A DNA stretch of 64,000 bases, from IMG/VR virus record IMGVR_UViG_3300032242_000723, positions 1 to 64,000 of that record; one strand, 5' to 3'. Shown in pieces: positions 9,136 through 58,510 of this stretch; the stretch's first letter is position 1; every line of letters begins with the position of its first letter. Under the pieces are notes generated by a model that was not told the DNA's origin, searched no databases, and saw only the letters and a list, made by a program, of their open reading frames with translations. Made by a program: the position numbers and the translations under genes.

Positions 9136-9152
9136 TAAGGAAGGAATCTATT

Positions 9153-9320
9153 ATGGCTAAAGTTAAAGGCGGCTCTAACGGAGCAGTAAAGATCAGTTTT
9201 TCTAATCAAGTAAAAGGTAGAACCACTATCGGTGGAACACCAAACGCAATCAAGTTCAGCACTATGAACAAGAGCAAGCGTAGAAGCTACAAGCCAAGTC
9301 GCGGCCAAGGTAAACCGTAA
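9153..9320 (+). CDS. Small basic protein
   Basis: 55 aa, K/R-rich, ending RGQGKP; SD AAGGAAGG before ATG 9153. Confidence 0.65.
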   Translation: MAKVKGGSNGAVKISFSNQVKGRTTIGGTPNAIKFSTMNKSKRRSYKPSRGQGKP

Positions 9321-9329
9321 ATATTCATC

Positions 9330-9959: not shown

Positions 9960-9960
9960 A

Positions 9961-42975: not shown

Positions 42976-43145
42976 TGGATATATCTGAACTCAAAAGACT
43001 TGCTGGTATAACAGATCACCGTGGTATGAGTACTGTCTCAGAACCCGTTAACCATGTCATATCTCGTCCTGGTACTGAAGAATGGTTCAAGCGTCCAGTG
43101 AATGACATGCAGATGCCAGCAGGTTTCAGAGGCCGCAAGAAATGA
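42975..43145 (+). CDS. Small peptide (56 aa, below the ORF-track cutoff)
   Basis: MDISELKRLAGITD...PGTEEWFKRP...GFRGRKK; coupled at both ends (TAATG, ATGA). Confidence 0.7.
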   Translation: MDISELKRLAGITDHRGMSTVSEPVNHVISRPGTEEWFKRPVNDMQMPAGFRGRKK

Positions 43146-45818: not shown

Positions 45819-46076
45819 ATGTCTAGAGTATTTAATTCCGAAGCTAAGCTCAAGTTGGTACAAATCATCAATGAAGGCATGGGCGTTCTACAAGAGATTG
45901 AGACATTAAACGAAGGTCTTAACGACACTGTTAAGGCAATCGCAGAAGAACTTGAGATCAAGCCAAGCATTCTCAAGAAGGCGATCAAGGTTGCCCACAA
46001 GTCCCGCTTAAATGAGACCAACGACGAAAACGCTGAACTCAATAATATCTTGGAGACTGTTGGTCGTACTGATTAA
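45819..46076 (+). CDS. dsDNA-binding protein (T4 DsbA / GapR-like)
   Basis: 85 aa helical; I..L.E...D..K.IAEELEIKPSILKKAIK pattern; SD AAGGAG. Confidence 0.55.
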   Translation: MSRVFNSEAKLKLVQIINEGMGVLQEIETLNEGLNDTVKAIAEELEIKPSILKKAIKVAHKSRLNETNDENAELNNILETVGRTD

Positions 46077-48790
46077 TGTATATTGACGCGATATTAGATA
46101 GCAATGCTGATCGCATTCATGTAGTTGAGCGTACTCCTGAGGGCAAAAGAGCATATAAAGAATATCCTACAAACTATGTTCTTTATTATGCCGATCCCAA
46201 AGGCAAACATCGCTCTATCTATAACGATCCAATCACTCGTTTCTCATCACGCAAACGCGGTGAGTTCGAGAAAGAGCGTAGGATTCACTCTAACAAGAAA
46301 CTGTTCGAGAGTGATGTCCCTGTAATCTTTAGATGTTTGTCTGAGAACTATCTCAACATTGATCCCCCAAAGCTTCATACATGCTTCTTCGATATTGAAG
46401 TGGACTTTGATCCTGAAAAGGGTTTCAGTCCAACTTCAGATCCATTCAATCCGGTAACAGCGATCAGCTTATATTTGGATTGGCAGGATCAACTTATCAC
46501 TTTGGTTACGCCACCAAAGCACATGTCGGACGAGACTGCACAAGAACTCACTAAGGATTTTCCTAACTGTTTCTTGTTCCGCAGTGAGATTGAGATGTTT
46601 GAGACATTCTTTGATCTTATTGATGACGCGGATGTGTTGACTGGTTGGAACTCTGAAGGATACGATATTCCCTATATGGTAAATCGTGTTACTCGCGTGA
46701 TGTCTAAGAATGACACTCGCAGGTTCTGTCTGTTGGGTCAACTTCCTAAACCACGCACATATGTACGCTTCGGCAACGAAGAGCAAACTTATGATCTTGT
46801 TGGTCGTATACATATGGACTATCTTCAGATGTATAAGAAGTACAACTATGAGTCTCGCCACAGCTATTCACTTGACGCTATTGGCGAATATGAACTAGGT
46901 GAACGCAAGACTCAGTATGAAGGTACGCTTGATCAACTATACAATAGAGACTTTAAGACTTTCGTAGAGTACAATAGACAAGATACTATGCTTGTGGCTA
47001 AGATCCACAACAAGTTGAAGTTTCTTGAACTCGCAAATGCCCTGGCGCATGAAAATACTGTACTGCTACCAACTGTTATGGGTTCGGTGGCTATGATTGA
47101 AATGGCGATTTATAATGAAGCACATGAACGGGGTTTCGTTGTCCCTGATAAAAAGCGTAGGGATTCGTCTAGTGGAGAGCAACAACAAGCAGCAGGTGCA
47201 TATGTTGCTGTACCGAAGAAGGGGATACACGAATACGTCGGAGCAGTTGACATCAACTCTCTATACCCCTCAGCGATCAGAGCACTTAACATGGCTCCAG
47301 AAACTATTATCGGTCAGGTCCGTCAAACACTTACTGACCAGTATATGCAGGAAAAAGGTGCTCGTCTGGGTGTTGAAAAGAAACGCAAAAAAGGCAGCGT
47401 TAATGAAGACGAAGCAGTAACTGGTTCTATTCTCTGGGAAAATCTCTTTGGTTCACTAGAATATACAGCTATTATGAACCAAGAGCGTGGTACAATGCTC
47501 ACACTTGACTATGAAAATGGTCATTCAAAAGAGATGTCTGCTGCTGAAATCTGGAAGATGATCTTTGACAGTCATAATCCATATATGATATCAGCGAACG
47601 GTACCATCTTTACATATGAGCGAGAGGGTATCATTCCTGGTCTATTATCACGCTGGTACTCAGAGCGTAAAGTACTTCAAAAGCAAGCTAAAGAAGCATA
47701 TGGTACTGATATGTTTGAGTATTATGATAAGCGTCAGCTTGTTCGTAAGATTCTACTCAACTCAGCATATGGCGCACTATTGAATGAGCATTGTCGTTTC
47801 TATGATAAGCGTATCGGACAATCAACTACATTGTCTGGTCGTCAGATCGTAAAGCATATGATGAGCCAGATCAATGAGACTATCGAAGGCAAGTATCAAC
47901 ATGACGGTGACTCAATCGTTTATGGTGACACTGACTCATGCTACTTTACAGCATATCCCGCTCTTAAGTCACAGATTGATGTTGGCGAACTTGAGTGGAA
48001 TAAGGAAAACTGCATAGAACTTTATGATAGTATCGCTGATATCGCAAACGAAAGCTTCCCTGCTTTCATGGAAAAGGCATTTCACTGTCCCCGTAAGAAT
48101 GGCGAGATCATCAAAGCTGGTCGAGAGTTGATCGGTGATCGTGCTCTATTCATTACTAAAAAGCGTTATGCGATCAATATCTTTGATAAAGAAAATAAGC
48201 GTAAGGACACTAACGGTAAGTTGGGTGAGATCAAAGCAATGGGTCTTGACTTGAAACGTGCTGATACTCCTAAGTATGTACAAGAGTTTCTAATGGAAGT
48301 ATTGTGCATGGTCATTCAAGATGGTAAGCCTCGTGATGAAGTCGTTACTAAGATCAGAGAGTTTAAAGACTGGTTATCAGAACAAGATAGCTGGACTAAA
48401 GGTTCTCCTAAATCAGTCAATAATCTAACTAAGCATACGATCAAGTATGAGAAAACTGGTAAGTGTAGTGTTGGTCATGCACTAGCGGCTATTAACTACA
48501 ACTACTTGCGTAGAATGAATGGCGATCAGTATAGTCAAAAGATCGTAGATGGCATGAAAGTCGTTGTATGTACTGTTAGAAACAATCCACTTGGAATTAC
48601 TTCTATAGCGTATCCAACTGATGAACGAAGACTGCCACAATGGTTCCTTGATCTACCGTTTGATGACAAAGAAATGGAACGTAAGCTTGTTGATGAAAAG
48701 ATTGAAAATCTTATCGGTGTTCTTAACTGGAATACTAGAACTGATACCAACACTAATAGTACAGTTGGTTCATTATTCAGTTTCGGTTAA
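46076..48790 (+). CDS. polB: Family B DNA polymerase
   Basis: Exonuclease motifs FFDIEVD, GWNSEGYDIPY, YNRQDT; polymerase motifs VDINSLYPS, KILLNSAYG, YGDTDS, KKRYA. Confidence 0.97.
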   Translation: MYIDAILDSNADRIHVVERTPEGKRAYKEYPTNYVLYYADPKGKHRSIYNDPITRFSSRKRGEFEKERRIHSNKKLFESDVPVIFRCLSENYLNIDPPKLHTCFFDIEVDFDPEKGFSPTSDPFNPVTAISLYLDWQDQLITLVTPPKHMSDETAQELTKDFPNCFLFRSEIEMFETFFDLIDDADVLTGWNSEGYDIPYMVNRVTRVMSKNDTRRFCLLGQLPKPRTYVRFGNEEQTYDLVGRIHMDYLQMYKKYNYESRHSYSLDAIGEYELGERKTQYEGTLDQLYNRDFKTFVEYNRQDTMLVAKIHNKLKFLELANALAHENTVLLPTVMGSVAMIEMAIYNEAHERGFVVPDKKRRDSSSGEQQQAAGAYVAVPKKGIHEYVGAVDINSLYPSAIRALNMAPETIIGQVRQTLTDQYMQEKGARLGVEKKRKKGSVNEDEAVTGSILWENLFGSLEYTAIMNQERGTMLTLDYENGHSKEMSAAEIWKMIFDSHNPYMISANGTIFTYEREGIIPGLLSRWYSERKVLQKQAKEAYGTDMFEYYDKRQLVRKILLNSAYGALLNEHCRFYDKRIGQSTTLSGRQIVKHMMSQINETIEGKYQHDGDSIVYGDTDSCYFTAYPALKSQIDVGELEWNKENCIELYDSIADIANESFPAFMEKAFHCPRKNGEIIKAGRELIGDRALFITKKRYAINIFDKENKRKDTNGKLGEIKAMGLDLKRADTPKYVQEFLMEVLCMVIQDGKPRDEVVTKIREFKDWLSEQDSWTKGSPKSVNNLTKHTIKYEKTGKCSVGHALAAINYNYLRRMNGDQYSQKIVDGMKVVVCTVRNNPLGITSIAYPTDERRLPQWFLDLPFDDKEMERKLVDEKIENLIGVLNWNTRTDTNTNSTVGSLFSFG

Positions 48791-48865: not shown

Positions 48866-49597
48866 ATGAAAGATTATCTACAAGACTTGATTCAACACAC
48901 ATATGGTCTTGGTGTTGTTGAACTCGTAAAGATTGACGGAACTGAAACTGAAACTACTGTTTCTGCACTATCCGAAGACAAGACCGTTATCGTAACTGGT
49001 ACGTTCAAGACTCCGATTGCTGACTTTATCGGTACATTCGGTATGCCTAACTTGTCAAAGCTCAAGACGATTTTGTCGTTTGATGACTATGACGATACGT
49101 CAACGATCAATGTTGGTCGTGGTACTAAGGAAGACCCAGATGCTCCTGCTCGTATTCACTTTGAGACGAAGGCAGGTGACTTTGTTAACGACTATCGTTT
49201 AATGGCTAAGTCCATCGTAGAAGACAAGATCAAGAAGGTCACATTCAATGGTGCTTCTTGGGATGTTAAGTTTGAGCCTACTGTTGCAGGCGTTATGCGT
49301 CTTAAGAAGCAGGCGTCTGTTCATAGCGAAGACATGAACTTTAAGACTAAGACTGACAATGGCAATCTAGTTGTCTATTTTGGTGACGTGTCTTCACACT
49401 CTGGTAACTTCGTATTGCAAGCAGGTGTGACTGGCAATCTTACTCGTTCTTGGAACTGGCCTGTAAAGGTGTTTCTTGCGATCATGGATCTTCCAGGTGA
49501 CAAGACGGTTAGCATCTCTGATCAGGGCGTTGCATTGATCGTTGTTGAAAACACGATCTCAACTTATCACTATTATCTGCCGGCACAGTCAAAATAA
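48866..49597 (+). CDS. Probable sliding clamp (gp45/PCNA-like)
   Basis: 243 aa, directly after the polymerase; FG...LSKL..IL and alternating beta pattern; a clamp loader is present in the window. Confidence 0.6.
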   Translation: MKDYLQDLIQHTYGLGVVELVKIDGTETETTVSALSEDKTVIVTGTFKTPIADFIGTFGMPNLSKLKTILSFDDYDDTSTINVGRGTKEDPDAPARIHFETKAGDFVNDYRLMAKSIVEDKIKKVTFNGASWDVKFEPTVAGVMRLKKQASVHSEDMNFKTKTDNGNLVVYFGDVSSHSGNFVLQAGVTGNLTRSWNWPVKVFLAIMDLPGDKTVSISDQGVALIVVENTISTYHYYLPAQSK

Positions 49598-49971
49598 TGA
49601 TCGGGTCTGTCAATGCTACGGGAAAGTATGTTAATACCACTAGCACCCCTGGCTATACCCATATTACTATTAATGCGAACCTTCGGGGTGCAGGCGATGT
49701 TCGATACCATTACTCAGGCTACTTAGAGGTATATGATGGTTACTCTTGGCATAGGGCTAGCGGTTCAACCATTGGGGTTGGATTAAACCCAGAAGCTGAA
49801 TCATTGCTTGATTGGGCTAAGAAAAAGCGTGATGAAGAACTAGCCCTTGAGCGTTTGGCAGAGTCTAGTGTTACTATTGCTGGATTGCTTCATGAAAAGA
49901 AAGACCTAGAAGACAAGATTAAGATGGTACAAATCTTACTAAAGGAAGAAGTACAACTTGGAACAAGTTAA
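49597..49971 (+). CDS. Hypothetical protein
   Basis: 124 aa, coupled to both neighbours. Confidence 0.6.
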   Translation: MIGSVNATGKYVNTTSTPGYTHITINANLRGAGDVRYHYSGYLEVYDGYSWHRASGSTIGVGLNPEAESLLDWAKKKRDEELALERLAESSVTIAGLLHEKKDLEDKIKMVQILLKEEVQLGTS

Positions 49972-51502
49972 TCTATCAACATCACATGATCCCAACTGGG
50001 CATTGTTTCTACCAGCAGTCTCGTCATTCTTTATTGCGGGACTAGGTAAGCAGCGTGAAGGTGAAAACTACTTTGACGCAGCGAGGATTCCTGCTCAGTT
50101 CAATGGTGATGTTGAGAAGTTAAACTTTCTTAACGAGAAAGAAGGCCTCTACACATATAAGTGGGGCTTGTATTCTGCTGGTCACGCGAACTTAGACATT
50201 ACGAAAGAAGACCACAATGAGTCTATCATTCGTAAGCGTGATCGCCAGAATACATTCTTGTTAGGTGACTCAGGTGGATTCCAGATATTGAAGTGTCAAT
50301 GGCCTGCTGACTGGAAGGACCCTAACTGTCCTCGTGCTATGAAAAAGCGTATTGAAGTTCTTAAGTGGATGGACGAATACATGGACTATGGCATGTGTCT
50401 GGATATCCCATCTCAGTCACTGACAACTTATCATATCAAGGATAAGAAGACTGGTACCTCAGCACATGGTATCAGCACGATTGAAGAAGCGATTACTGCC
50501 ACCCACATCAACAATGAGTATTTCATCAACAATCGTGATGGTCGTTGTAAGTTTCTAAATGTATTGCAGGGTCGTAATCATACACAGTCGGATGTCTGGT
50601 ATGAAGAGATGAAGAAGTATTGCGATACCAATGTCTATGGTGATCGTGCTTTCAATGGTTGGGCATTTGGTGGTCAAAACAAGATTGACATTCACTTGAT
50701 GCTTAAGCGTCTTGTTGGTATCATTCACGATGGTTATCTTGAAGAAGGCAAGCAGGATCTTATTCACTGTCTTGGTACTTCTATCATGGAGTATGCTGTA
50801 CTGTTTTCGGATATTCAAAAAGCCATTCGCAAGCATCACAATCCAAAGTTACAGATTACTTTTGACTGTGCTAGTCCATTCTTTGCTGCTGCTAAAGGTC
50901 TTGCTTACAACAACAACTCGTTTGAGCATAACAAGAAGTGGAGTTATTCTATGGAAAAAACTGCCGAGGATAAGAAGTACGCAACTGACAATCGTAAGTT
51001 CAGTGATGCGGTATTAACTGATAATATTCATAAGTTGTTCACTGATAGTCCAGTAACTGATCTATTGACTGTAAAAGACTTGTGCTATCGTGGCCAAGGT
51101 TTCTTAGGTCAACATGGTAAAGAAACAAAAACAAGCTGGGATACATTAAGCTATACCTTGCTCCAGGCTCACAATGTCTATCAACATATGACTGCCGTTC
51201 AAGAAGCAAATCGTAGATACGAACAGGGTACTAAGCCTAAAATGGTTATCGACCAGTTTGATACTAATGATTTTGGTGAGATCGTTGACGAGATTTTCTC
51301 GTTGAAAGATCGTCAAAAGAGTCTTGACATGATTGATAAGTATGACAAGTTTTGGCAGCAGATGAAAGCTGGTCAAGGGTTCTCAGGTAAGAAGACAGTT
51401 AACGCATCTACGATGTTCAATCAGTTGTTCACGGTTGAGGAATACGAAGTCGAGGAAGAGATTGAAGATAGTGACGATGCGATTTCGGAAGTATTAGATT
51501 GA
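49958..51502 (+). CDS. dpdA: TGT/DpdA-family guanine transglycosylase-like protein
   Basis: LLGDSGGFQI, MCLDIP, LNVLQG, GWAFGG, HCLGT, TFDCAS TGT-barrel motifs; next to deazaguanine synthesis genes; TTG start. Confidence 0.72.
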   Translation: MEQVNLSTSHDPNWALFLPAVSSFFIAGLGKQREGENYFDAARIPAQFNGDVEKLNFLNEKEGLYTYKWGLYSAGHANLDITKEDHNESIIRKRDRQNTFLLGDSGGFQILKCQWPADWKDPNCPRAMKKRIEVLKWMDEYMDYGMCLDIPSQSLTTYHIKDKKTGTSAHGISTIEEAITATHINNEYFINNRDGRCKFLNVLQGRNHTQSDVWYEEMKKYCDTNVYGDRAFNGWAFGGQNKIDIHLMLKRLVGIIHDGYLEEGKQDLIHCLGTSIMEYAVLFSDIQKAIRKHHNPKLQITFDCASPFFAAAKGLAYNNNSFEHNKKWSYSMEKTAEDKKYATDNRKFSDAVLTDNIHKLFTDSPVTDLLTVKDLCYRGQGFLGQHGKETKTSWDTLSYTLLQAHNVYQHMTAVQEANRRYEQGTKPKMVIDQFDTNDFGEIVDEIFSLKDRQKSLDMIDKYDKFWQQMKAGQGFSGKKTVNASTMFNQLFTVEEYEVEEEIEDSDDAISEVLD

Positions 51503-51511
51503 CCGAAACAC

Positions 51512-51540
51512 TTGCAACACATATAGCACAGTGCTATATT
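51512..51540 (+). promoter_or_regulatory. Sigma70-type promoter
   Basis: TTGCAA-17nt-TATATT. Confidence 0.6.
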
Positions 51541-51565
51541 GTAAAAACGATAACAAGAGATTATA

Positions 51566-52027
51566 ATGACACAAAGTCCTGAACAAGCACAAGCCCTTGC
51601 CGAAAAGCGAGAGCGTATTAAGAGTAATGCAAGACGTATGATATTTGTGAAATTCCAGCGTGAGGGCATTCACAAGTATCCTGGTGCAGACACTGACCCT
51701 GCACTAGCAACGGGAGACTGGGATGACGTAAGTTTTCTAGGTTTCCCGCACAGACATATTTTCCACTTCACTGTGGGAATACAAGTATTTCACAATGATC
51801 GGGACATTGAGTTCATCCAGTTCAAGCGTTGGCTCGAAAAGAGTTTCAACGAAGGAACATTGCAACTTGATCATCGCTCATGTGAAATGGTTAGCGATGA
51901 GATGTATGAAATGATCTCTACTCGCTATCCTGGACGAGACATCAATATCACTGTCGCTGAAGATGGTGAGAATGGTGCAACTATTGAATACAATACATTA
52001 ATCCCCCTTCAACAAATGAAACTCTAA
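51566..52027 (+). CDS. Second T-fold QueD paralogue (DpdL-like)
   Basis: FLGFPHRHIFHF fits the LxxxHRHxF signature; SCEM...; a canonical QueD is encoded separately. Confidence 0.62.
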   Translation: MTQSPEQAQALAEKRERIKSNARRMIFVKFQREGIHKYPGADTDPALATGDWDDVSFLGFPHRHIFHFTVGIQVFHNDRDIEFIQFKRWLEKSFNEGTLQLDHRSCEMVSDEMYEMISTRYPGRDINITVAEDGENGATIEYNTLIPLQQMKL

Positions 52028-52037
52028 GGAATACAAA

Positions 52038-52280
52038 ATGGCTAAGGCCCAAGTTAAGTCTAATCTTTCCCGCACTCGTCAGGTGTTTGACGATCTTGAC
52101 TCTTATCGCGACTTCTGTCGGGATCATGGTTATAGGTTCGATGAGCGTGACCTGTATAGTTCTAAGAGCTATGTCTATCGGCAATTTCAAAAGTTTGTCG
52201 CAGGCAAGCCCGTTAAAAATCAATGGGAAATTGATTTAGCAAGATTTAAGGAACAAGGCACTAATATTCGCCGTATCTAA
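52038..52280 (+). CDS. Hypothetical protein
   Basis: 80 aa, SD AAGGA. Confidence 0.65.
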   Translation: MAKAQVKSNLSRTRQVFDDLDSYRDFCRDHGYRFDERDLYSSKSYVYRQFQKFVAGKPVKNQWEIDLARFKEQGTNIRRI

Positions 52281-52339
52281 TAAAGTGTTCACGGGGGATG
52301 CAAATCTCCCGTGAACCATCTATAATGAAAGAAAAACAT

Positions 52340-53527
52340 ATGCGTAAACTATTCTACCTGGGCTTGGAGTCTTATAAGGCTCGTTATACATTACAGTTAC
52401 AAGACTGGAACAGTCGCGTGTTCAAGGATCGTAAACTTAAGGTAACTTATGTTCCAGGTCAAACACTTGATAACAGTCAAAAGATCGTAGTGGGTCAAGT
52501 TCTCGATGCACATGGTCGTAGTTATTTCGCGATGAGTCAAATGATGAACCTAGTTGCTATGATGCAAAAGGGTGAAGTCACTAATAAAGACGTAGTTTAT
52601 TTTGAAGACATGTTTCAGCCCGGCTTTGAAAGTCTCGGCTACATTCTCAATCAAGTCGAAGCAGAACAACGTCCTCGTATCTTTGTTCGTTGTCTAGCAC
52701 AAACGATTGATCCAGATGACTTTGTTCATGTATGGGGAATGAGTAAGTGGATGGGCAACTACGAACATATGGTCAATGATATCGTCAAGTTCTCGAATGG
52801 TGCGGTACTTGCAACCAGCGAAGAGATGGTCATGAACATGAAGATCGCAGGATGGACTGCTGACATCTACAATATCTCAGGGCTTGCGTTTGGTAAGTAT
52901 GAAGTCATTGGTCGAGTTGGTAGTTTAAAGCCGTTTACTGATCGTCGTATGCGAGTGGTATTCTCCGCTCGTTGGGATCAGGAGAAACAGCCAGACTTCT
53001 ATATGGACTTGATTGAGCGATGGAACGAACGCTTCCCGAGCAAGGATGTTGAGTTCGTAGTCTGTAGTGGTGGTAAGCTTAACAGCAACAATCAAAGCTA
53101 CATGGCTCGTACCAAGAAGATGGTTGAAAACGGCAAGCTAACAGTTTACGAAGACTTAGAGAAGGATCGTTATTACGAAATCCTCAATGATAGTCGTGTC
53201 GTATTCAACTGTGCTCTTCAAGATTGGGTGTCAAACACAGTAAGCGAAGCAGACGCATTGGGATGCAATGTGCTTTATCCAGCATATCGTTCATTTCCCG
53301 AAACGTTTGCAAACGATCATGAGCGTCTATATACTCCATGGTCACTTGATGATGCTATCAATAAGTTGGATCCTCTACTTAGGAAGGCTCATATTAACAT
53401 GGGCAAGATCAGTGATTGGAACGACGGTACTATTGGGCGTATCATCGACATCATGGAAGGCAACGGAGAACAGTGGTCGCGTATGACTACTGATTATCGT
53501 AAACATTCTCGCAAAGAGAAATACTAA
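52340..53527 (+). CDS. GT-B glycosyltransferase
   Basis: VVFSARWDQEKQPDF...YYEILNDSRVVFNCALQDWVSNTVSEADALGCNVLYP; start reassigned to ATG 52340. Confidence 0.78.
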   Translation: MRKLFYLGLESYKARYTLQLQDWNSRVFKDRKLKVTYVPGQTLDNSQKIVVGQVLDAHGRSYFAMSQMMNLVAMMQKGEVTNKDVVYFEDMFQPGFESLGYILNQVEAEQRPRIFVRCLAQTIDPDDFVHVWGMSKWMGNYEHMVNDIVKFSNGAVLATSEEMVMNMKIAGWTADIYNISGLAFGKYEVIGRVGSLKPFTDRRMRVVFSARWDQEKQPDFYMDLIERWNERFPSKDVEFVVCSGGKLNSNNQSYMARTKKMVENGKLTVYEDLEKDRYYEILNDSRVVFNCALQDWVSNTVSEADALGCNVLYPAYRSFPETFANDHERLYTPWSLDDAINKLDPLLRKAHINMGKISDWNDGTIGRIIDIMEGNGEQWSRMTTDYRKHSRKEKY

Positions 53528-53562
53528 AACTAAGCGAACAATTATATTTAAGGAGTAAAATA

Positions 53563-53760
53563 ATGAACGCACATCAAGATATCGAAACACAAGTGGCCGC
53601 ATATCAGGCCGAGTCTGCTAAGTTTGAAGCAGGCAACGCTGCTGCTGGCACTCGTGCTCGCAAGGCATTAGCTGAACTTGCTAAGGCAGTCAAGGCACGT
53701 CGCAATGAAATCACTGAGACGAAGAATGCCCGTGCTGAAGCAAAATCTACAGCCGCATAA
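53563..53760 (+). CDS. Histone H1-like (Hc1-family) small protein
   Basis: KFEAGNAAAGTRARKALAELAK motif; SD AAGGAG. Confidence 0.65.
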   Translation: MNAHQDIETQVAAYQAESAKFEAGNAAAGTRARKALAELAKAVKARRNEITETKNARAEAKSTAA

Positions 53761-53838
53761 CTTATACTAAATAGAATGTAGGCTGCACAAAGGTGGTCTA
53801 CATTCTTCTACTACAACCATCACAAAGGAAGGTTAACT

Positions 53839-54519
53839 ATGAGCTTTAACAAACAAAAAACTGATCCCGATTTGGGTCGCAGAGTTCACGAACATCTTGT
53901 TCACGTTGGAGTTGAGACTCCTACTGTAGAAAACAATCTTAGTCGTACTGACAAGATCGAGATTATTGAACGGCATTTCAAGTCTATCATGGAAACAATG
54001 GGACTCGATCTAACTGATGACAGTTTGATTGATACGCCAAAGCGTGTTGCCAAAATGTATATCGGCGAAATCTTTTGGGGCCTCGACTATGAAGCATTCC
54101 CCAAGTGTACCGCAGTTAATAACAAGATGAAATATAATGAGATGGTCGTTGAGCGTAATGTAAACGTTCAATCTAACTGTGAGCATCACTTTGTCATCAT
54201 CGATGGCCTAGCAACAGTCGCATATGTTCCTAACGAAAAGGTACTTGGTCTATCAAAGATCAATCGTATCGTAGAATACTTCAGCAAGCGTCCACAAATC
54301 CAAGAACGTTTGACCGAACAGATTTTTCACACTCTACAATTTATCCTTGAAACAAATGATGTTGCCGTTATGATTGACGCACAACACTATTGCGTAAAAT
54401 CGCGTGGTGTGGAAGATACTGGTTCCTCAACGGTAACGGTTCGTCTTGGTGGCGGATTTAAGAACGATCCTGCTGCTCGTGCTGAGTTTCTTAGCATTGC
54501 ACGTATGGGCAAGTGCTAA
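53839..54519 (+). CDS. folE: GTP cyclohydrolase I
   Basis: DTPKRVAKMY, SNCEHHF, GLSKINRIV, RPQIQERLT, HYCVKSRGV. Confidence 0.96.
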   Translation: MSFNKQKTDPDLGRRVHEHLVHVGVETPTVENNLSRTDKIEIIERHFKSIMETMGLDLTDDSLIDTPKRVAKMYIGEIFWGLDYEAFPKCTAVNNKMKYNEMVVERNVNVQSNCEHHFVIIDGLATVAYVPNEKVLGLSKINRIVEYFSKRPQIQERLTEQIFHTLQFILETNDVAVMIDAQHYCVKSRGVEDTGSSTVTVRLGGGFKNDPAARAEFLSIARMGKC

Positions 54520-54543
54520 CAACTAATCGCCCGATTTTAATGC

Positions 54544-54572
54544 TTGACAATATAGCATGATTCGTCTATGAT
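54544..54572 (+). promoter_or_regulatory. Sigma70-type promoter
   Basis: TTGACA-17nt-TATGAT. Confidence 0.75.
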
Positions 54573-54634
54573 AGTGAAATCGGTCTATGCGTCATCCCGA
54601 TTAAGAAACTCTGCCGCATTACAAAGGATATAAG

Positions 54635-55126
54635 ATGACACAATATATGTATACAAGCACAAAAGAATACCACGATGCGTTTCCTTGTGCATATCGTCAA
54701 TGGCGGGCCGACAGTCACTGTAATAAGATTCATGGCTATTCATTTACTATCAAGGTTTACTTTGGTGCCAACACACTTGATGCACGTAATTGGTGTGCGG
54801 ATTATGGTGGGCTGAAGGACTTGAAGGCAATTCTTGAAGATCAATTTGATCACACACTTCTTGTTGCAGAAGATGATCCTGATATGGATATGTTCAAGAT
54901 GTTGCAAGAGCGTGGTATGGCAAAGCTTACTATCATCCCTGCAACTGGATGTGAAGCACTCGCTGACATGATTTATAAGTTCATCAACAGTGTCTATATT
55001 CCCGATCATTGGGGACAAGGTGAAGCAGAGCGTCTTTGGTGCTATCGTGTTGAAGTTCGCGAAACTCAGAGCAACATGGCTTTTCGTGAAGGTCATCGTG
55101 AATGGAATGAGAATCTGTTAGGATAA
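54635..55126 (+). CDS. queD: 6-carboxytetrahydropterin synthase
   Basis: SHCNKIHGYSF, DYGGLK..K..L...FDHTLL, TGCEALA, VEVRET. Confidence 0.85.
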   Translation: MTQYMYTSTKEYHDAFPCAYRQWRADSHCNKIHGYSFTIKVYFGANTLDARNWCADYGGLKDLKAILEDQFDHTLLVAEDDPDMDMFKMLQERGMAKLTIIPATGCEALADMIYKFINSVYIPDHWGQGEAERLWCYRVEVRETQSNMAFREGHREWNENLLG

Positions 55127-55668
55127 TGAAGCAGATTTATTATTCAAACGAACAGGTCAATGGGTTTGTTCATGAAATCATCAGACAGATGGTGCAAGAG
55201 AATTACAAGCCTGACTATATTGTAGGTATCACTAGGGGAGGTCTTGATTTGGCATTGAAACTAAGTCATTACTTAGATGTCCCCGTGCAAACCCTTAATG
55301 TAAGTTTGCGTGATAGTGAGCATTTTGAATCTAACTGTAGTATGGCAGAAGATGCGTTTGGTTATGTTGACGAAGAAGATCGCAAACAGGTTGGTAGTCG
55401 TTGGGATACGATGAAGCGTAAGAATATTCTTATCGTAGACGATATCAATGACACTGGCGCTACACTTGCATGGATCAAGCAAGATTGGCAAAGTTGTTGC
55501 CTGCCCAATGAACCAAGTTGGGAAACTGTTTGGGGAAACAATGTGAAGTTTGCAGTGTTGGTAGACAACATGGATAGCAAAGAAGAAGTTGACTACAAGG
55601 GTACCGAAATCAATAAGTTTGAGGAGCCTTCTTGGGTTATCTTTCCTTGGGAAAAATGGTGGAAGTAA
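55126..55668 (+). CDS. Type I phosphoribosyltransferase (xanthine/guanine PRT-like)
   Basis: IVGITRGG, ILIVDDINDTGATL (PRPP-binding motif), WVIFPWE. Confidence 0.9.
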   Translation: MKQIYYSNEQVNGFVHEIIRQMVQENYKPDYIVGITRGGLDLALKLSHYLDVPVQTLNVSLRDSEHFESNCSMAEDAFGYVDEEDRKQVGSRWDTMKRKNILIVDDINDTGATLAWIKQDWQSCCLPNEPSWETVWGNNVKFAVLVDNMDSKEEVDYKGTEINKFEEPSWVIFPWEKWWK

Positions 55669-56078
55669 TGGCCACACCAATGCGTGATGATCTAATGGTT
55701 CAGCAACAGATTACCTCTGAGTGGCAACACATGGTGGGCGTAATCATGCTGAACCAAACCCATAGGCAATCGGTAAAAAGAGTCCTACCAGAGTTTCTAT
55801 CATATTGGGACACATGCGAGAAGTTCATAAATAGTACTCCTGAAGAAGTTTACACAGTCATCAGACCATTGGGTTTAGTTGCCGTTCGGGAAAAGAGAAT
55901 CCGAATGATGTCCAACCAATACTTGACTTGGGACAAGAATGATGCTAAAGTGCTTTATGGTATAGGAAAGTACGGTAGTGATAGCTACGAGATTTTCTTT
56001 AAACAGAACTACACAGTGCAACCTACTGACAAAGAGTTGCTCCGTTACTTAGAGGAAGATGTCAATGCAATCACTTAA
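55668..56078 (+). CDS. MBD4-like HhH-GPD DNA glycosylase
   Basis: W...V.VIMLNQT, IRPLGL...R...I, LYGIGKYGSDSYEIF closely follow the MBD4 catalytic domain pattern. Confidence 0.8.
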   Translation: MATPMRDDLMVQQQITSEWQHMVGVIMLNQTHRQSVKRVLPEFLSYWDTCEKFINSTPEEVYTVIRPLGLVAVREKRIRMMSNQYLTWDKNDAKVLYGIGKYGSDSYEIFFKQNYTVQPTDKELLRYLEEDVNAIT

Positions 56079-56919
56079 GATAAGCGAACTATTCTATTCT
56101 ATTCAGGGCGAAGGAAGATATCAGGGTGTCCCGAGTATCTTCCTTAGGACGTTTGGATGTAACTTCACATGTGGCGGCTTTGGCATGCCTAAGGGAGAAA
56201 TGTCTGCTGAGCGTTTAGCGATTGATCCTAAAGAATATAAAGAATATGATGATCTTCCATTGGTCACTACAGGATGTGACTCGTATGCATCATGGGATCC
56301 TCGCTTTAAGAAGTTGTCCCCAGTGATGACGATTGATGCGATTGTTGATCGTATCATGGAACTATTGCCCCACGGTGAATGGCGTGATGAGCATCTTGTG
56401 ATCACAGGAGGTGAACCATTGCTCGGTTGGCAGAAAGTCTTTCCTGCACTGTTGAGTCATCCTAAAATGGCTAATCTTAAAGAGATTACATTTGAGACTA
56501 ACGGTACACAACCGCTTACTCAGGAGTTTGCAAACTATCTTGAAGATTGGACTTGGCCTCTGGAATATCCAGGATTTGAGCGTGAAGTCACTTTCTCTGT
56601 TAGTCCTAAGTTAAGTTGCAGCGGTGAACTTCGTGAAGAAGCGATCAAGCCTAAGGTCGTCAGTGATTACTATCAAGTAGGACATGTTTATCTCAAGTTT
56701 GTTATCGCAACTGAAGAAGATGCTGAAGAAGCATTGGAAGTCACCAAGTTGTATAATGAAGCTGGGTTTAGAGGTTCGGTATATTTCATGCCAGTTGGTG
56801 GTGTTGAAAGTGTCTATCATCTAAACAATCGCAATGTTGCTGATCTTGCCATGAAACATGGTATTCGTTATAGTGATAGATTACATATCCCTTTGTTCGG
56901 AAACAGTTGGGGAACATAG
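56059..56919 (+). CDS. queE: 7-carboxy-7-deazaguanine synthase (radical SAM)
   Basis: ISELFYSIQGEG, FLRTFGCNFTC...GCDSYASWD, ITGGEPL, FETNGT, SVSPKL, RLHI.LFG. Confidence 0.9.
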   Translation: MSMQSLKISELFYSIQGEGRYQGVPSIFLRTFGCNFTCGGFGMPKGEMSAERLAIDPKEYKEYDDLPLVTTGCDSYASWDPRFKKLSPVMTIDAIVDRIMELLPHGEWRDEHLVITGGEPLLGWQKVFPALLSHPKMANLKEITFETNGTQPLTQEFANYLEDWTWPLEYPGFEREVTFSVSPKLSCSGELREEAIKPKVVSDYYQVGHVYLKFVIATEEDAEEALEVTKLYNEAGFRGSVYFMPVGGVESVYHLNNRNVADLAMKHGIRYSDRLHIPLFGNSWGT

Positions 56920-57173
56920 TGTACCATCCAGATAAAGACTATCTTATGTTATCAGTGGCTACTCGAAAGTTCGCATGGCTACCAAAACGATGTGCGTACA
57001 CCAAAAAGATTCTTTGGCTAACTTGGGCATATTGTCTTGAATATGAGTTTCGTCAAGATTTCAGTACGCATTGGACTTATTCACCTGTTAAAATGGTTCC
57101 GATCCCATACCATTCTCCATATTGGTGTAGCAGCAAAGCATATGTATTCGCAAAACTTAAAGGTGAATTTTGA
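56907..57173 (+). CDS. Hypothetical protein
   Basis: 88 aa, overlapping both neighbours. Confidence 0.45.
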   Translation: MGNIVYHPDKDYLMLSVATRKFAWLPKRCAYTKKILWLTWAYCLEYEFRQDFSTHWTYSPVKMVPIPYHSPYWCSSKAYVFAKLKGEF

Positions 57174-58510
57174 AAACCTACAATAAGCGTATTGGATTTC
57201 TTGTTAGCTCACAAACCTTGATTCCTCACGGTGGTATCGGACAGTTCGCTAAGAGTTTTTGCGAGTTGATGGAATCACATGATATCAAGGTAGATATTAT
57301 TACTGACAAGGCTCCTCAAGGTCTTAGCACAGAGTTTCTTGAATCATTCAATGCTACTGTTATCTATCCAGACGAACCACTTAAGTACACGGATCATAGT
57401 GCAATCTTTATGTATGAGGATAGTTATTGCTATGAGAGAATGGCTAACTTCCGTAGTGCGATCATCAAGGCATTCTCTACTAACATATATGAAACATTAG
57501 TGTGTAATACATATGAAACTGTACAGGTTGCAAGTACATTAGGACTTGAGGAGTGTGTGCAGATTATTGCCTATACTCATCTTGAGAGTCAAATATTCAA
57601 AGACACAAAGAATCCATTCACGAGTAGTGTCAACGAAATGATGCGACTACAGTTATTGATGAATAACATCACGATTGGTACACAGAGTAAGTTCAATAGA
57701 CTTCAGTTTGAAGATGCGGTTCATCTTCCTATTCCAATCACTGAACGTGGACTACTTGAACAACATATCAAGCCTAGAGAAGGCGTACTGTTCATCGGAC
57801 GTTGGGAAGAGGGAAAGAATCCTGAGTTGTTCATCGACTTGATCGAACAGACAAAGTTACCGGCTAAGGTAATGACAAGCACTACTGGTGCTAAGAAGTT
57901 TGAAGAACGATTGAAAAAGATCGGTGCTACTTACGAGATCAAGATCGGCATCATTGGACAAGAAAAGGTAGACTTCATCACGAGTGCGAGGGTAGCATTT
58001 AATCCTAGTACGGTAGAAAGCTATGGTATGGCATTCTATGAGCAAACGATTCAGCTACCTACATTCTGTTTAGATAATCAACGCTGGACACAGAACTTCT
58101 CCAGTCAGTTTTTCTTTACAACAGATAAGAGAAATATGGCTGAGGCCGTTAAAGGTGCATATGAGATGTTTGATACTGCTGAATCTTGGTACGGTAAAGG
58201 ATGGTTAGAGAACAGGATCGCAACAGAAGATCAAGTGTTTCATAAGTGGAACTCATGCTTCTCTGAGTTTGAACCTAAGAAATCAAATAACAATACTGCT
58301 AAGATTTGCAACGAAACTACGACTAAGTATGCTGACTTTGTAGATTCACTGAAGCGTAGGGTTCTGTGTATTGATGACATCAAGTCTGTTTTAACGAACA
58401 AATATAAGTTTAGATTGATCTATACTGATACTGACACATATTTGACTAAGGATCCTCACTTCGAACCTACTGAAGAAGTATCTGGTTTAAGTTTGTTTGC
58501 TGGATTATGA
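57170..58510 (+). CDS. GT-B glycosyltransferase
   Basis: PHGGIGQF, VLFIGRWEEGKNPELF, AFNPSTVESYGMAFYE. Confidence 0.8.
   Translation: MKTYNKRIGFLVSSQTLIPHGGIGQFAKSFCELMESHDIKVDIITDKAPQGLSTEFLESFNATVIYPDEPLKYTDHSAIFMYEDSYCYERMANFRSAIIKAFSTNIYETLVCNTYETVQVASTLGLEECVQIIAYTHLESQIFKDTKNPFTSSVNEMMRLQLLMNNITIGTQSKFNRLQFEDAVHLPIPITERGLLEQHIKPREGVLFIGRWEEGKNPELFIDLIEQTKLPAKVMTSTTGAKKFEERLKKIGATYEIKIGIIGQEKVDFITSARVAFNPSTVESYGMAFYEQTIQLPTFCLDNQRWTQNFSSQFFFTTDKRNMAEAVKGAYEMFDTAESWYGKGWLENRIATEDQVFHKWNSCFSEFEPKKSNNNTAKICNETTTKYADFVDSLKRRVLCIDDIKSVLTNKYKFRLIYTDTDTYLTKDPHFEPTEEVSGLSLFAGL

What the first reader, a model, noticed from the sequence alone, without database searches (positions are those of the whole stretch)
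49958..56919. 7-deazaguanine DNA-modification pathway without QueC, with a DpdL-like T-fold protein
Seen: TGT-like, second T-fold (LxxxHRHxF), FolE, QueD and QueE genes lie directly downstream of the polymerase and clamp, with no queC, queF or gat in the cluster. Established: FolE, QueD and QueE make CDG; phage DpdA proteins put deazaguanines into DNA; from memory, a QueD paralogue with this motif (DpdL) decarboxylates CDG to 7-deazaguanine. Inference: the genome carries dDG or dCDG or a new derivative. The 514-aa TGT-like protein is long and may be a distinct subfamily.
Basis: partly seen in the sequence, partly recalled or inferred. Interest (0 to 1): 0.68.

Follow-up and report, generated by a model that had tools for sequence, protein, structure and literature searches.

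The report
Clamp-tethered 7-deazaguanine DNA modification module
A freshwater giant phage carries the known QueC-less (DpdL-type) pathway for swapping guanine in its DNA for 7-deazaguanine, but with an undescribed transglycosylase family and a sugar transferase that both copy the DNA polymerase's clamp-binding tail, so the final base may be more elaborate than the known one.

Summary
On the + strand, after polB and a PCNA/gp45-fold clamp, lie a 514-aa TGT-fold protein, a DpdL-type T-fold protein (motif LGFPHRHIF), FolE, QueD and QueE. No QueC, QueF or Gat was found in the 333-kb record. The pathway kind is already published (Cui/Hutinet 2023: DpdL, dDG in phage phiST), so the core finding is a new member of a known kind.

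A second GT4-like gene lies just downstream.

New points:
- The 514-aa protein belongs to a large unannotated family (832 clusters at 50% identity, no Pfam hit). It keeps the TGT catalytic motifs and is nearest DpdA2, not DpdA3.
- A GT4-like protein sits in the cluster, near DpdL or DpdA, in seven unrelated DpdL phage lineages. It is absent from six other DpdL lineages and from a QueC-type relative.
- The DpdA-type enzyme, and in two lineages a second glycosyltransferase, ends in a copy of that phage's own polymerase C-terminal tail. I infer replisome-coupled modification.

Whether the final base is plain dDG or a glycosylated derivative is open and needs mass spectrometry.

The parts
46076..48790 (+). 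Family B DNA polymerase (context). Its last residues, GSLFSFG, form a T4-type C-terminal clamp-binding-like tail.
   Evidence: PF00136 and PF03104. 48% identical to the Phosso polymerase. Tail read.
48866..49597 (+). Sliding clamp with a PCNA/gp45-like two-domain monomer.
   Evidence: phrog_12062. AF2 pLDDT 93. Foldseek matches PCNA at E about 5e-11, TM about 0.68. The pol-clamp-TGT-like gene order is conserved in PA5oct, Vibrio phage 2.275.O and metagenomic contigs.
49597..49971 (+). 124-aa ORF of unknown function between the clamp and the transglycosylase.
   Evidence: No family hit. A homologue is present in 45 of 80 related IMG/VR loci.
49958..51502 (+). DpdA-like DNA-guanine transglycosylase candidate: TGT-fold TIM barrel, a C-terminal helical region and a disordered acidic tail.
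   Evidence: AF2 pLDDT 91. Top PDB folds are all TGT. Family-invariant residues S73, D104, S105, G107, D149, P151, H270, G273 and D303 fall in DSGGFQ / LD-IP / HxLG / FDC, and these motifs align with validated nt-1 DpdA2. hhalign against a DpdA2-type set gives 98%.
51413..51430 (+). MFNQLF motif (residues 486-491) in the disordered tail of the transglycosylase. It is a polymerase-tail mimic and putative clamp-binding peptide, followed by an acidic tail.
   Evidence: Tails compared. 66 of 69 close orthologues and 32 of 60 diverse family members carry h-x-x-[LMF]-F in the last 60 residues, against 5% of internal windows.
51566..52027 (+). DpdL-type T-fold protein, the proposed 7-carboxy-7-deazaguanine decarboxylase. 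The signature LGFPHRHIF lies at 51737-51763.
   Evidence: phrog_17812 at 2.9e-33. tblastn hits to PA5oct, Phosso, ACP17 and phiST DpdL. Alignments A3 and A4. Motif definition taken from PMC10516641.
52038..52280 (+). Conserved 80-aa ORF of unknown function between DpdL and the glycosyltransferase.
   Evidence: No family hit. Present in 76 of 80 related IMG/VR loci.
52298..53527 (+). GT4-like (GT-B) glycosyltransferase, 'GT409'. The likely true start is at 52340.
   Evidence: Weak Pfam hits to Glyco_trans_1_2 and Glyco_trans_1_4. Atlas neighbours are viral GT1/GT4 clusters. R..K and (D/E)x7E motifs seen in alignment A5. Orthologues lie in the cluster, near DpdL or DpdA, in PA5oct, Phosso, BUCT-ZZ01, BCSR5, X1 and ACP17.
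53563..53760 (+). 65-aa ORF of unknown function.
   Evidence: No family hit. Present in 30 of 80 related loci.
53839..54519 (+). GTP cyclohydrolase I (FolE).
   Evidence: PF01227 at 1.5e-61. NF006824 at 322 bits, above its cut-off.
54635..55126 (+). QueD (6-carboxytetrahydropterin synthase), with a CxxxHGY variant of the active-site motif, as in the phiST and ACP17 QueD.
   Evidence: PF01242 at 1.4e-18. phrog_2389 at 5.4e-38. Alignment A3.
55126..55668 (+). Type I purine phosphoribosyltransferase.
   Evidence: PF00156 at 1.6e-16. The nearest solved proteins are archaeal purine PRTases 1vdm and 4z1o. Orthologues lie in the BUCT-ZZ01 and PA5oct clusters but are absent from Phosso, ACP17, X1 and BCSR5.
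55632..56078 (+). MBD4-like HhH-GPD DNA glycosylase domain protein.
   Evidence: PF00730 at 6.8e-07. phmmer to the MBD4 glycosylase domain gives 8.7e-15 over residues 15-139, with the catalytic Asp position aligned (PTDKELLRY against PEDHKLNKY).
56059..56919 (+). QueE (7-carboxy-7-deazaguanine synthase, radical SAM).
   Evidence: phrog_2076 at 6.7e-58. PF04055. Several QueE TIGRFAMs hit below their cut-offs.
56907..57173 (+). 88-aa ORF of unknown function.
   Evidence: No family hit. Present in 13 of 80 related loci; many of those loci end before this point.
57170..58510 (+). Second GT4-like glycosyltransferase, 'GT446', with a C-terminal extension ending GLSLFAGL (polymerase-tail-like).
   Evidence: Weak PF00534 hit. 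Same family as GT409 by jackhmmer and by search with alignment A5. An orthologue in BUCT-ZZ01 ends SLEDFFND. All full-length orthologues in IMG/VR loci end xLFxx.
58604..59638 (+). UvdE-type UV-damage endonuclease. This is neighbouring repair-gene context and is not shown to be part of the module.
   Evidence: PF03851 at 3.3e-41. phrog_8420.

Best explanation
The cluster is a QueC-less, DpdL-type 7-deazaguanine DNA-modification module in a freshwater jumbo phage.

Steps inferred from family membership:
- FolE, QueD and QueE convert GTP to 7-carboxy-7-deazaguanine (CDG).
- The DpdL-type T-fold protein converts CDG to 7-deazaguanine, as proposed for phage phiST, whose DNA has dDG in place of dG.
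- The 514-aa TGT-fold protein exchanges guanine in double-stranded phage DNA for this base. It belongs to an undescribed DpdA-like clade nearest DpdA2.

Steps inferred from sequence patterns found here:
- The transglycosylase is recruited to the phage sliding clamp through a C-terminal peptide that copies the polymerase's own clamp-binding tail, so base exchange follows the replication fork.
- The second glycosyltransferase (GT446) has the same tail, so it also works on clamp-loaded DNA.
- The purine PRTase most simply recycles the released guanine to GMP, and so back to GTP as the pathway's input.
- The two GT4-like enzymes are conserved partners of DpdL. They probably decorate the deazaguanine, or the DNA that carries it, so the final base may be a glycosylated derivative rather than plain dDG.

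No enzymatic step has been shown. All are inferred.
For: Family assignments:
- FolE, QueD and QueE are assigned.
- DpdL: signature motif plus 34-62% identity to DpdL of phiST, ACP17, PA5oct and Phosso. The published link from DpdL to dDG is in PMC10516641.

Transglycosylase:
- TGT fold at high confidence.
- Catalytic motifs are invariant across 60 diverse family members and align with validated nt-1 DpdA2. hhalign to a DpdA2-type set gives 98%.
- Family members sit beside deazaguanine genes in PA5oct (DpdL, QueE), in Vibrio phage 2.275.O (QueF, YhhQ, QueC, Gat, FolE, QueE) and in a metagenomic contig (QueC).
- PA5oct DNA resists G-containing restriction enzymes (PMC12191111).

Absences in the 333-kb record: no QueC, QueF or Gat.

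Clamp tether:
- The neighbouring gene has a PCNA/gp45 fold.
- In seven phages the DpdA-type tail matches that phage's polymerase tail. The clearest test was BUCT-ZZ01: an 'FF' variant was predicted from its DpdA2 and GT tails and then found in its polymerase.
- Permuting the pairing gives p about 0.001.
- Motif enrichment at the C-terminus is shown.

Glycosyltransferase link:
- The GT409 family lies in the cluster, near DpdL or DpdA, in seven lineages.
- It is absent from the whole records of six other DpdL phages and of the QueC-type Vibrio phage 2.275.O, with positive controls.
- The only two members in this genome are both in the cluster.
- There is no hydroxymethyl-pyrimidine route: ThyA is canonical and no Tet/JBP was found.
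- GT446 orthologues end in the polymerase-like tail.
Against: - No chemistry was measured.
- DpdL's decarboxylase activity is itself unproven. Cui et al. could not reconstitute dDG from DpdL plus DpdA of phiST or ACP17.
- The tail motif is short. As a bare pattern at the extreme C-terminus it occurs at chance frequency in this genome (8 ORFs against 8.9 expected). Validated nt-1 DpdA2 lacks it. In the window's own protein it is followed by 23 acidic residues rather than being terminal.
- The binding prediction could not be run.
- phiST reaches full dDG replacement without any glycosyltransferase, so the GTs are not needed for dDG. They could serve another substrate.
- 7-deazaguanine has no hydroxyl group to glycosylate.
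- The PRTase is present in only three of the seven GT+DpdL lineages.
- The record is about 92% complete, so a missing QueC cannot be strictly excluded.
Confidence: 0.55

Rival explanations
1. Plain dDG as in phiST. The module ends at 7-deazaguanine in DNA. The two glycosyltransferases act on something other than DNA, such as host envelope, phage proteins or small molecules, and the PRTase is ordinary purine salvage.
For: phiST DNA carries dDG in place of dG with DpdL and no glycosyltransferase. Six DpdL lineages lack the GT family. 7-deazaguanine offers no hydroxyl acceptor. The GT Pfam hits are weak and generic.
Against: The GT lies in the cluster, near DpdL or DpdA, in seven unrelated lineages, and is absent from the QueC-type relative. 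GT446 and its BUCT-ZZ01 orthologue end in the same peptide as the polymerase and DpdA of their own phage, which is hard to explain for a non-DNA enzyme. ACP17 DpdL plus DpdA without the adjacent GT gave no dDG in E. coli.
Confidence: 0.3
2. Pre-replicative route. The PRTase converts 7-deazaguanine or CDG base to the ribonucleotide, as TubE and ToyH do in tubercidin and toyocamycin biosynthesis. Host or phage kinases and ribonucleotide reductase then make the dNTP, and the polymerase incorporates it. The TGT-like protein has another role.
For: A purine-type PRTase is embedded between QueD and QueE here, and also lies in the BUCT-ZZ01 and PA5oct clusters. There is precedent for PRTases acting on CDG or preQ0 in Streptomyces nucleoside antibiotics (from memory).
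Against: The PRTase is absent from Phosso, ACP17, X1 and BCSR5, which keep DpdL, DpdA and the GT. A TGT-fold enzyme with intact catalytic motifs is always present. No dedicated dGTP-clearing enzyme or kinase was seen in the cluster. All deazaguanine phages studied so far are argued to modify DNA after replication.
Confidence: 0.1
3. The inserted base is CDG, or an amide (ADG) or other carboxyl derivative. DpdL would have a different activity, and the distant AsnB-like PP-loop ATPase (G000 68861-69844) would amidate CDG.
For: DpdL activity is unproven. DpdA2 of VH7D can insert CDG at low efficiency. A PP-loop ATPase with a sub-threshold QueC N-terminal match exists 12 kb downstream. A carboxyl group would give a handle for further decoration.
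Against: The PP-loop ORF resembles stand-alone asparagine-synthase domains that are widespread in phages. It lacks a QueC-like C-terminal cysteine cluster and is not linked to the cluster. The only chemical datum for a DpdL phage is dDG.
Confidence: 0.08
4. The TGT-like enzyme modifies tRNA (host or phage), not DNA.
For: The closest solved folds are tRNA-guanine transglycosylases.
Against: No Pfam TGT match. No CxCxxC..H zinc motif is visible in the sequence or in the family consensus. The nearest characterised relatives are DNA-acting DpdA2. Synteny with polymerase and clamp is conserved, and the tail is polymerase-like. PA5oct DNA is restriction-resistant at G-containing sites.
Confidence: 0.03

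Closest known systems
Cellulophaga phage phiST dDG system (DpdA3 + DpdL + FolE/QueD/QueE; Cui, Hutinet et al., NAR 2023, PMC10516641)
   Same: The same CDG-making trio is present, along with the same DpdL family carrying the LxxxHRHxF signature. There is no QueC. A TGT-superfamily enzyme lies next to replication genes.
   Different: phiST uses a 259-aa DpdA3, while the window has a 514-aa protein of another clade (hhalign only 77% over 82 columns; BFVD rank 25). phiST has MazG and a P-loop kinase in its cluster and no glycosyltransferase, PRTase or glycosylase.
DpdA2 transglycosylases of T4-like phages (Vibrio phages nt-1 and VH7D, validated for preQ0/preQ1; ACP17, X1 and BUCT-ZZ01 by homology)
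   Same: The TGT fold and the catalytic DSGG[FL]Q, [LF]D(E)IP, HxLG and [FY]D[CS] motifs are shared. hhalign gives 98%. In ACP17, X1 and BUCT-ZZ01 the context is also DpdL plus a GT, and the tail is also polymerase-like.
   Different: There is no BLAST-level similarity. The window's family has its own LYSAGHA motif and a GWAFGG loop, is longer, and has its own C-terminal region. It forms a separate set of 832 clusters at 50% identity.
Pseudomonas jumbo phage PA5oct (Wroclawvirus) cluster
   Same: The gene order is pol - clamp - small ORF - TGT-like (33% identical) - GT - DpdL (62% identical) - ... - PRTase - QueE. Its DNA resists G-containing restriction enzymes and is sensed by END nucleases (PMC12191111).
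   Different: PA5oct has one GT rather than two, and a short epimerase-like ORF. No MBD4-like glycosylase, QueD or FolE was found in the 17-kb stretch examined. The modification chemistry is unknown there as well.
T4/RB69 replisome: the gp43 polymerase C-terminal tail binding the gp45 clamp, a motif shared by gp33 and gp55 (from memory: Berdis 1996; Shamoo and Steitz 1999)
   Same: A short hydrophobic C-terminal peptide of the (S/T)LDxLF type sits on the polymerase and is reused by other proteins of the same phage. The clamp is a PCNA-like trimer-type monomer.
   Different: Here the clients would be DNA-modifying enzymes (a transglycosylase and a glycosyltransferase), which to my knowledge has not been described. 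Binding is not shown.
T4 alpha- and beta-glucosyltransferases acting on 5-hydroxymethylcytosine in DNA
   Same: They are GT-B fold enzymes that decorate an already non-canonical base in phage DNA after replication.
   Different: They belong to different GT families. The acceptor here cannot be hydroxymethyl-pyrimidine, because ThyA is canonical and there is no Tet/JBP. A DNA acceptor for the window's GTs is only inferred.

Membership tests
DpdL (proposed CDG decarboxylase, QueD paralogue) | Signature LxxxHRHxF replacing QueD's CxxxHGH | tested here: met
   LGFPHRHIF at residues 58-66. L58, H62, H64 and F66 are invariant in 11 DpdL sequences.
DpdL (proposed CDG decarboxylase, QueD paralogue) | Sequence homology to phiST CGPG_00067 and ACP17 DpdL, with the short architecture that lacks QueD's roughly 40-residue insert | tested here: met
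   tblastn: ACP17 54% (9e-38), phiST 32% (3e-7). jackhmmer recovers phiST at 2e-36. The deletion relative to QueD is visible in alignment A3.
DpdL (proposed CDG decarboxylase, QueD paralogue) | Genomic context: FolE, QueD, QueE and a DpdA, with no QueC | tested here: met
   None of 80 related IMG/VR loci has QueC.
DpdL (proposed CDG decarboxylase, QueD paralogue) | Decarboxylation of CDG to 7-deazaguanine | not testable with these tools
   The activity is also unproven in the literature.
DpdA / TGT superfamily (DNA-guanine transglycosylase) | TGT TIM-barrel fold | tested here: met
   AF2 pLDDT 91 and pTM 0.90. All 50 listed PDB matches are TGT, prob 1.00, TM about 0.5 by target.
DpdA / TGT superfamily (DNA-guanine transglycosylase) | Catalytic aspartates (the Z. 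mobilis D102 and D280 equivalents) and the substrate-binding Asp | tested here: met
   D104 (DSGGFQ), D149 (LD-IP) and D303 (FDC) are invariant in 60 family members and align with the same motifs of nt-1 DpdA2. The equivalence to Z. mobilis residue numbers is from memory.
DpdA / TGT superfamily (DNA-guanine transglycosylase) | Match to Pfam PF01702 (TGT) | tested here: not met
   No hit for the protein or anywhere in the genome at E<=10. The DpdA2-type proteins of X1, ACP17 and BUCT-ZZ01 also fail this test.
DpdA / TGT superfamily (DNA-guanine transglycosylase) | Base exchange on DNA rather than tRNA | not testable with these tools
   Only indirect evidence: replisome synteny, a polymerase-like tail, and restriction resistance of PA5oct DNA.
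DpdA2 subfamily | Sequence clustering with nt-1 and VH7D DpdA2 | tested here: inconclusive
   Profile-level homology: 98% to the ACP17/X1/BUCT/BCSR5 set and 94.8% to nt-1. There is no BLAST hit, and the family-specific motifs differ. No tree was built. The paper's supplementary lists are not held.
DpdA3 subfamily | Sequence or profile similarity to phiST CGPG_00065 | tested here: not met
   hhalign 77% over 82 columns only. Foldseek BFVD E 7e-3, rank 25.
GT4 / GT-B glycosyltransferases | Family profile match and the Ex7E-type motif with the R/K phosphate-binding motif | tested here: inconclusive
   Pfam hits fall below the gathering cut-offs (22.3, 18.5 and 21.8 bits). Atlas neighbours carry PF00534, PF13692 and PF20706. 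R211, K216 and two Glu are invariant in A5. The first Ex7E position is Asp in the window's GT409. No structure was predicted.
Type I purine phosphoribosyltransferase | PF00156 above its cut-off, and nearest solved relatives being purine PRTases | tested here: met
   60.4 bits against a cut-off of 26.3. 1vdm at 9.4e-10 and 4z1o at 5.1e-06. Substrate not tested.
MBD4-type HhH-GPD glycosylase | Homology to the MBD4 glycosylase domain with the catalytic Asp retained | tested here: met
   8.7e-15 over residues 15-139. The Asp in PTDKELLRY aligns with the Asp in PEDHKLNKY.
Sliding clamp (PCNA/gp45 type) | Two-domain clamp fold | tested here: met
   AF2 pLDDT 93. Foldseek matches PCNA at E about 5e-11, TM 0.65-0.70.

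The most novel reading that the evidence does not exclude
In this clade, and in PA5oct, Phosso, ACP17, X1, BCSR5 and BUCT-ZZ01, guanine is replaced by a glycosylated 7-deazaguanine. Candidates are a sugar on the nucleophilic C7 freed by DpdL, or on N2. This would be a purine counterpart of T4's glucosyl-hydroxymethylcytosine. It would be installed directly behind the replication fork, because the transglycosylase and one glycosyltransferase ride on the sliding clamp through tails copied from the DNA polymerase.
Probability: 0.25. Interest if true: 0.88.

Novelty: new variant of a known kind. Interest (0 to 1): 0.62.

Why it matters
The bare pathway (DpdL, no QueC) is already in the literature. 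Three things seen here are not, within the library I could search.

1. A very large, unannotated DpdA-like family. It has 832 clusters at 50% identity and thousands of metagenomic members, and standard profiles miss it. Deazaguanine DNA in jumbo phages is therefore probably under-counted.

2. A glycosyltransferase that accompanies DpdL in seven unrelated phage lineages, including the therapy-relevant PA5oct group. This could explain why dDG could not be reconstituted from the ACP17 pair, where the adjacent GT was left out. It also points to an unknown, possibly sugar-bearing, purine modification.

3. Polymerase-tail mimicry on the modifying enzymes. This gives a concrete, testable mechanism for how some phages could reach near-complete replacement of a base after replication.

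All three can be tested directly in cultured phages: PA5oct, ACP17, X1 and BUCT-ZZ01.

Tried and rejected
- Megablast of the cluster against the phage collection found nothing.
- Sequence and profile searches of the 514-aa protein and its family against PDB sequences gave only noise.
- The search for related loci with the 60-member alignment failed because it had no stretch conserved enough. It worked with the DpdL alignment, but the 80 best loci were all close relatives, so they add little independent support.
- The supplementary tables of Cui et al. are not held. I could not see whether PA5oct-type proteins had already been assigned to a DpdA subfamily.
Clamp binding was therefore not tested.
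- Read laying was not used. All runs holding the locus are kept as contigs, which cannot show base modification.
- The idea that the GTs serve a hydroxymethyl-pyrimidine pathway was rejected. ThyA has the canonical PFN/PPCH residues and a 355-bit match, and there is no Tet/JBP.
- The PP-loop ORF at G000 68861-69844 was considered as a hidden QueC and rejected. It looks like an asparagine-synthase-type domain.
- The second GT of phage X1, 40 kb from its cluster, has no terminal polymerase-like tail, so it gives no extra support.
- The bare C-terminal [LM]F pattern is at chance level genome-wide. The argument rests on conservation and on within-phage matching, not on the pattern itself.
- Promoter and terminator scans were at chance level.
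- No specificity-determining residues separating DpdL-context from QueC-context family members were evident.

Full report
**Setting**

The window is the first 64 kb of a 333,115-bp virus record (CheckV 92% complete). Its family B polymerase is closest (41-48% identity) to jumbo phages of the Phosso, Atu_ph07, XaC1, Vibrio 2.275.O and GAP32/121Q group. Near-identical DNA occurs mainly in freshwater and aquatic metagenomes. Homologues of the cluster's proteins are very abundant: more than 6,700 and more than 7,900 hits for two of them.

**Checking the observation**

On the + strand the gene order is as follows:

| Coordinates | Gene |
|---|---|
| 46076-48790 | polB |
| 48866-49597 | 243-aa protein (clamp) |
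| 49597-49971 | 124-aa ORF |
| 49958-51502 | 514-aa protein |
| 51566-52027 | 153-aa T-fold protein |
| 52038-52280 | 80-aa ORF |
| 52298-53527 | 409-aa GT-like protein |
| 53563-53760 | 65-aa ORF |
| 53839-54519 | FolE |
| 54635-55126 | QueD |
| 55126-55668 | 180-aa phosphoribosyltransferase |
| 55632-56078 | 148-aa HhH-GPD protein |
| 56059-56919 | QueE |
| 56907-57173 | 88-aa ORF |
| 57170-58510 | 446-aa GT-like protein |
| 58604-59638 | UvdE |

- FolE, QueD and QueE are solid family matches.
- The 243-aa protein folds as a PCNA/gp45-type clamp (pLDDT 93; Foldseek E about 5e-11).

**QueC**

- The Pfam QueC model gives only a sub-threshold hit (20.9 bits against a cut-off of 22) to the PP-loop of a 327-aa ORF at G000 68861-69844.
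- That ORF has no PDB relative by sequence.
- Its Atlas neighbours are viral stand-alone asparagine-synthase-type domains.
- phmmer and tblastn with phage QueC, QueF, Gat and YhhQ from Vibrio phage 2.275.O find nothing in the genome.
- None of 80 related IMG/VR loci carries QueC.
- 'No QueC' therefore stands, with the caveat that about 8% of the genome may be missing.

**The T-fold protein is DpdL**

- It has the published signature LxxxHRHxF, here LGFPHRHIF.
- It lacks QueD's roughly 40-residue insert.
- It is 34-62% identical to DpdL of phiST, ACP17, PA5oct and Phosso.
- Cui, Hutinet et al. (PMC10516641) defined DpdL in phiST, whose DNA has dDG at 302,000 per 10^6 nucleotides. They noted that DpdL occurs in phages with DpdA, FolE, QueD and QueE but no QueC.
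DpdL's activity remains unproven, since reconstitution failed.

**The 514-aa protein**

- No profile library recognises it.
- An exhaustive search finds 832 clusters at 50% identity.
- A 60-member alignment has invariant S73, D104, S105, G107, D149, P151, H270, G273 and D303. These lie in DSGGFQ, LD-IP, HxLG and FDC.
- The AF2 model (pLDDT 91) has tRNA-guanine transglycosylases as all 50 listed PDB matches.
- Among viral models the ranking is: the Vibrio 2.275.O homologue (4e-26), nt-1 DpdA2 (1.8e-9), and far below, phiST DpdA3 (7e-3).
- Profile comparison gives 98% (E 1e-13) to the DpdA2-type proteins of X1, ACP17, BUCT-ZZ01 and BCSR5. It gives 94.8% to validated nt-1 DpdA2 and 77% to DpdA3. 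ACP17's enzyme is DpdA2-like by BLAST.
- The catalytic motifs align column for column. The family also has its own LYSAGHA and GWAFGG motifs and no BLAST link to DpdA2.
- I treat it as a DpdA-like clade nearest DpdA2. Its subfamily rank is not settled, because no tree was built and the paper's supplementary lists were unavailable.
- Its genomic company supports a deazaguanine role:
  - PA5oct has DpdL, a PRTase and QueE nearby.
  - Vibrio 2.275.O has QueF, YhhQ, QueC, Gat, FolE and QueE.
  - One metagenomic contig has QueC.
- In other contigs the synthesis genes lie elsewhere, as in Phosso.
- PA5oct DNA resists G-containing restriction enzymes. The chemistry is unknown (PMC12191111).

**Glycosyltransferases as partners of DpdL**

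- Iterative searches over the DpdL neighbourhoods of cultured phages recover the 409-aa protein's family in PA5oct, Phosso, BUCT-ZZ01 (62% identical), BCSR5 and X1.
- ACP17's adjacent 342-aa ORF is also GT1/GT4-like.
- In every one of these phages the gene lies in the cluster, near DpdL or the DpdA.
- Whole-record searches with the family alignment, with positive controls, find it in none of the following:
  - DpdL phages phiST, MA9V-3, RHph_I1_18, Bakedbeans, Ahp1 and D479.
  - The QueC/QueF-type Vibrio phage 2.275.O, which has the TGT-like protein but no DpdL.
- The alignment keeps an R..K motif and a (D/E)x7E motif typical of GT4 enzymes.
- This genome has only two family members, both in the cluster.
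- There is no hydroxymethyl-pyrimidine route for the GTs to act on: ThyA is canonical and there is no Tet/JBP.
- The GT is thus an optional but recurrent extension of the DpdL branch. It was not discussed in the papers I could search.
- The PRTase is of purine type. It recurs only in BUCT-ZZ01 and PA5oct.

**Polymerase-tail mimicry**

The window's polymerase ends in GSLFSFG. This resembles the T4/RB69 gp43 clamp-binding tail (that function is from memory). The 514-aa protein carries MFNQLF in its disordered tail, followed by an acidic stretch.

Within each phage, the DpdA-type tail resembles that phage's polymerase tail:

| Phage | Polymerase tail | DpdA-type tail |
|---|---|---|
| ACP17 | SLDDLFE | TLDELFE |
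| X1 | SLESLFG | SLEELFG |
| Vibrio 2.275.O | NTDLFDW | NNDLFGW |
| PA5oct | FDSLFGW | FNSLFDV |
| Phosso | FNDLFTF | VEGLF |

- BUCT-ZZ01 served as a test. Its DpdA2 ends SLDSFFD and its second GT ends SLEDFFND, so I predicted an 'FF' polymerase tail. The polymerase ends TLDDFFS.
- Permuting the pairings over seven lineages gives p about 0.001.
- The motif is present in the last 60 residues as follows:
  - 66 of 69 close orthologues.
  - 32 of 60 diverse family members.
  - 5% of internal windows, for comparison.
- The window's GT446 ends GLSLFAGL, and all full-length orthologues end xLFxx.

Caveats:
- As a bare pattern the motif is at chance frequency in the genome.
- nt-1 DpdA2 lacks it.
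- X1's distant second GT lacks a terminal copy.
- The binding prediction could not be run.

I infer, but have not shown, that the transglycosylase and GT446 are clients of the sliding clamp encoded immediately upstream.

**Mechanism proposed**

The proposed route is: GTP to CDG by FolE, QueD and QueE; CDG to 7-deazaguanine by DpdL; then exchange for guanine in newly replicated DNA by the clamp-tethered DpdA-like enzyme.

- The PRTase may recycle the released guanine into the GTP pool.
- The GTs add a further decoration of unknown chemistry.
- Alternatively, the GTs act elsewhere and the product is plain dDG.
- All catalytic steps are inferred from homology and context.

**Other neighbours**

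The HhH-GPD protein is an MBD4-type glycosylase domain with the catalytic Asp retained. Together with UvdE it may simply be repair equipment. Phosso has a different, unrelated 'glycosylase' ORF at the equivalent position.

**Verdict**

The pathway assignment is right and already known. The end product is less certain than stated, because of the overlooked glycosyltransferases.
- Novelty lies in the undescribed DpdA-like family, the DpdL-GT association and the polymerase-tail mimicry.
- Mass spectrometry of DNA from cultured relatives and clamp-peptide binding assays are decisive.

Noticed in passing
G000:C1:68861-69844 (outside the window; L001:1327-2310): A 327-aa PP-loop ATPase (SGGMDS motif) with a sub-threshold QueC N-terminal hit. 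Atlas neighbours are viral stand-alone asparagine-synthase-type domains. It could in principle amidate a carboxylate such as CDG, but nothing links it to the cluster.
   Followed up: partly
window 55632-56078: A phage-encoded homologue of the MBD4 glycosylase domain (E 8.7e-15, catalytic Asp aligned) sits between the PRTase and QueE. MBD4 removes T or U opposite G. Its role in a genome whose G may be replaced is unclear.
   Followed up: partly
L014 (Synechococcus phage BUCT-ZZ01, ON615601.1) 4608-11542: A T4-like freshwater cyanophage has nearly the same accessory set as the window: QueE, PRTase, QueD, FolE, a GT446-type GT, DpdA2, DpdL and a GT409-type GT that is 62% identical. This suggests the module moves between unrelated freshwater phages.
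   Followed up: partly
L009:9275-10426 (Vibrio phage Bakedbeans gp176) and L015:9473-10354 (Chryseobacterium phage MA9V-3): DpdL is the C-terminal part of longer proteins (383 and 293 aa). Their N-terminal parts have no Pfam hit, so these may be fusions with an unknown partner domain.
   Followed up: no
window 46076-48790; L002:1605-6831; contigs: The window's polB is one intact 904-aa ORF with a weak NUMOD4 hit at residues 491-540. The orthologue is split by a homing endonuclease in PA5oct. In related metagenomic contigs it is split or carries intein-splicing hits.
   Followed up: no
window 43142-44440: A 432-aa protein with a glycoside hydrolase family 19 (chitinase class I) domain, probably a lysin or virion-associated muralytic enzyme.
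   Followed up: no
G000:C1:270428-271252 (L019): A canonical thymidylate synthase (355 bits, PPCH and PFN residues). Thymine is presumably made normally, and there is no sign of hydroxymethyl-pyrimidines.
   Followed up: yes
G000:C1:63998-64426 and 140291-140839: Two further ORFs (142 and 182 aa) end in polymerase-like tails (GSGLFCDA and DTDSLFAE). They may be additional clamp clients, or chance matches.
   Followed up: no
L003:10615-11727 (Vibrio phage 2.275.O): In the QueC/QueF-type relative, the gene after the TGT-like protein is not a GT. It is a 370-aa protein with a weak amidoligase (PF12224) hit, so the slot after the transglycosylase may hold lineage-specific tailoring enzymes.
   Followed up: no
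contigs (L017:13616-14971): Cas12f1-like TnpB ORFs lie a few kb downstream of the TGT-like gene in two related metagenomic jumbo-phage contigs.
   Followed up: no
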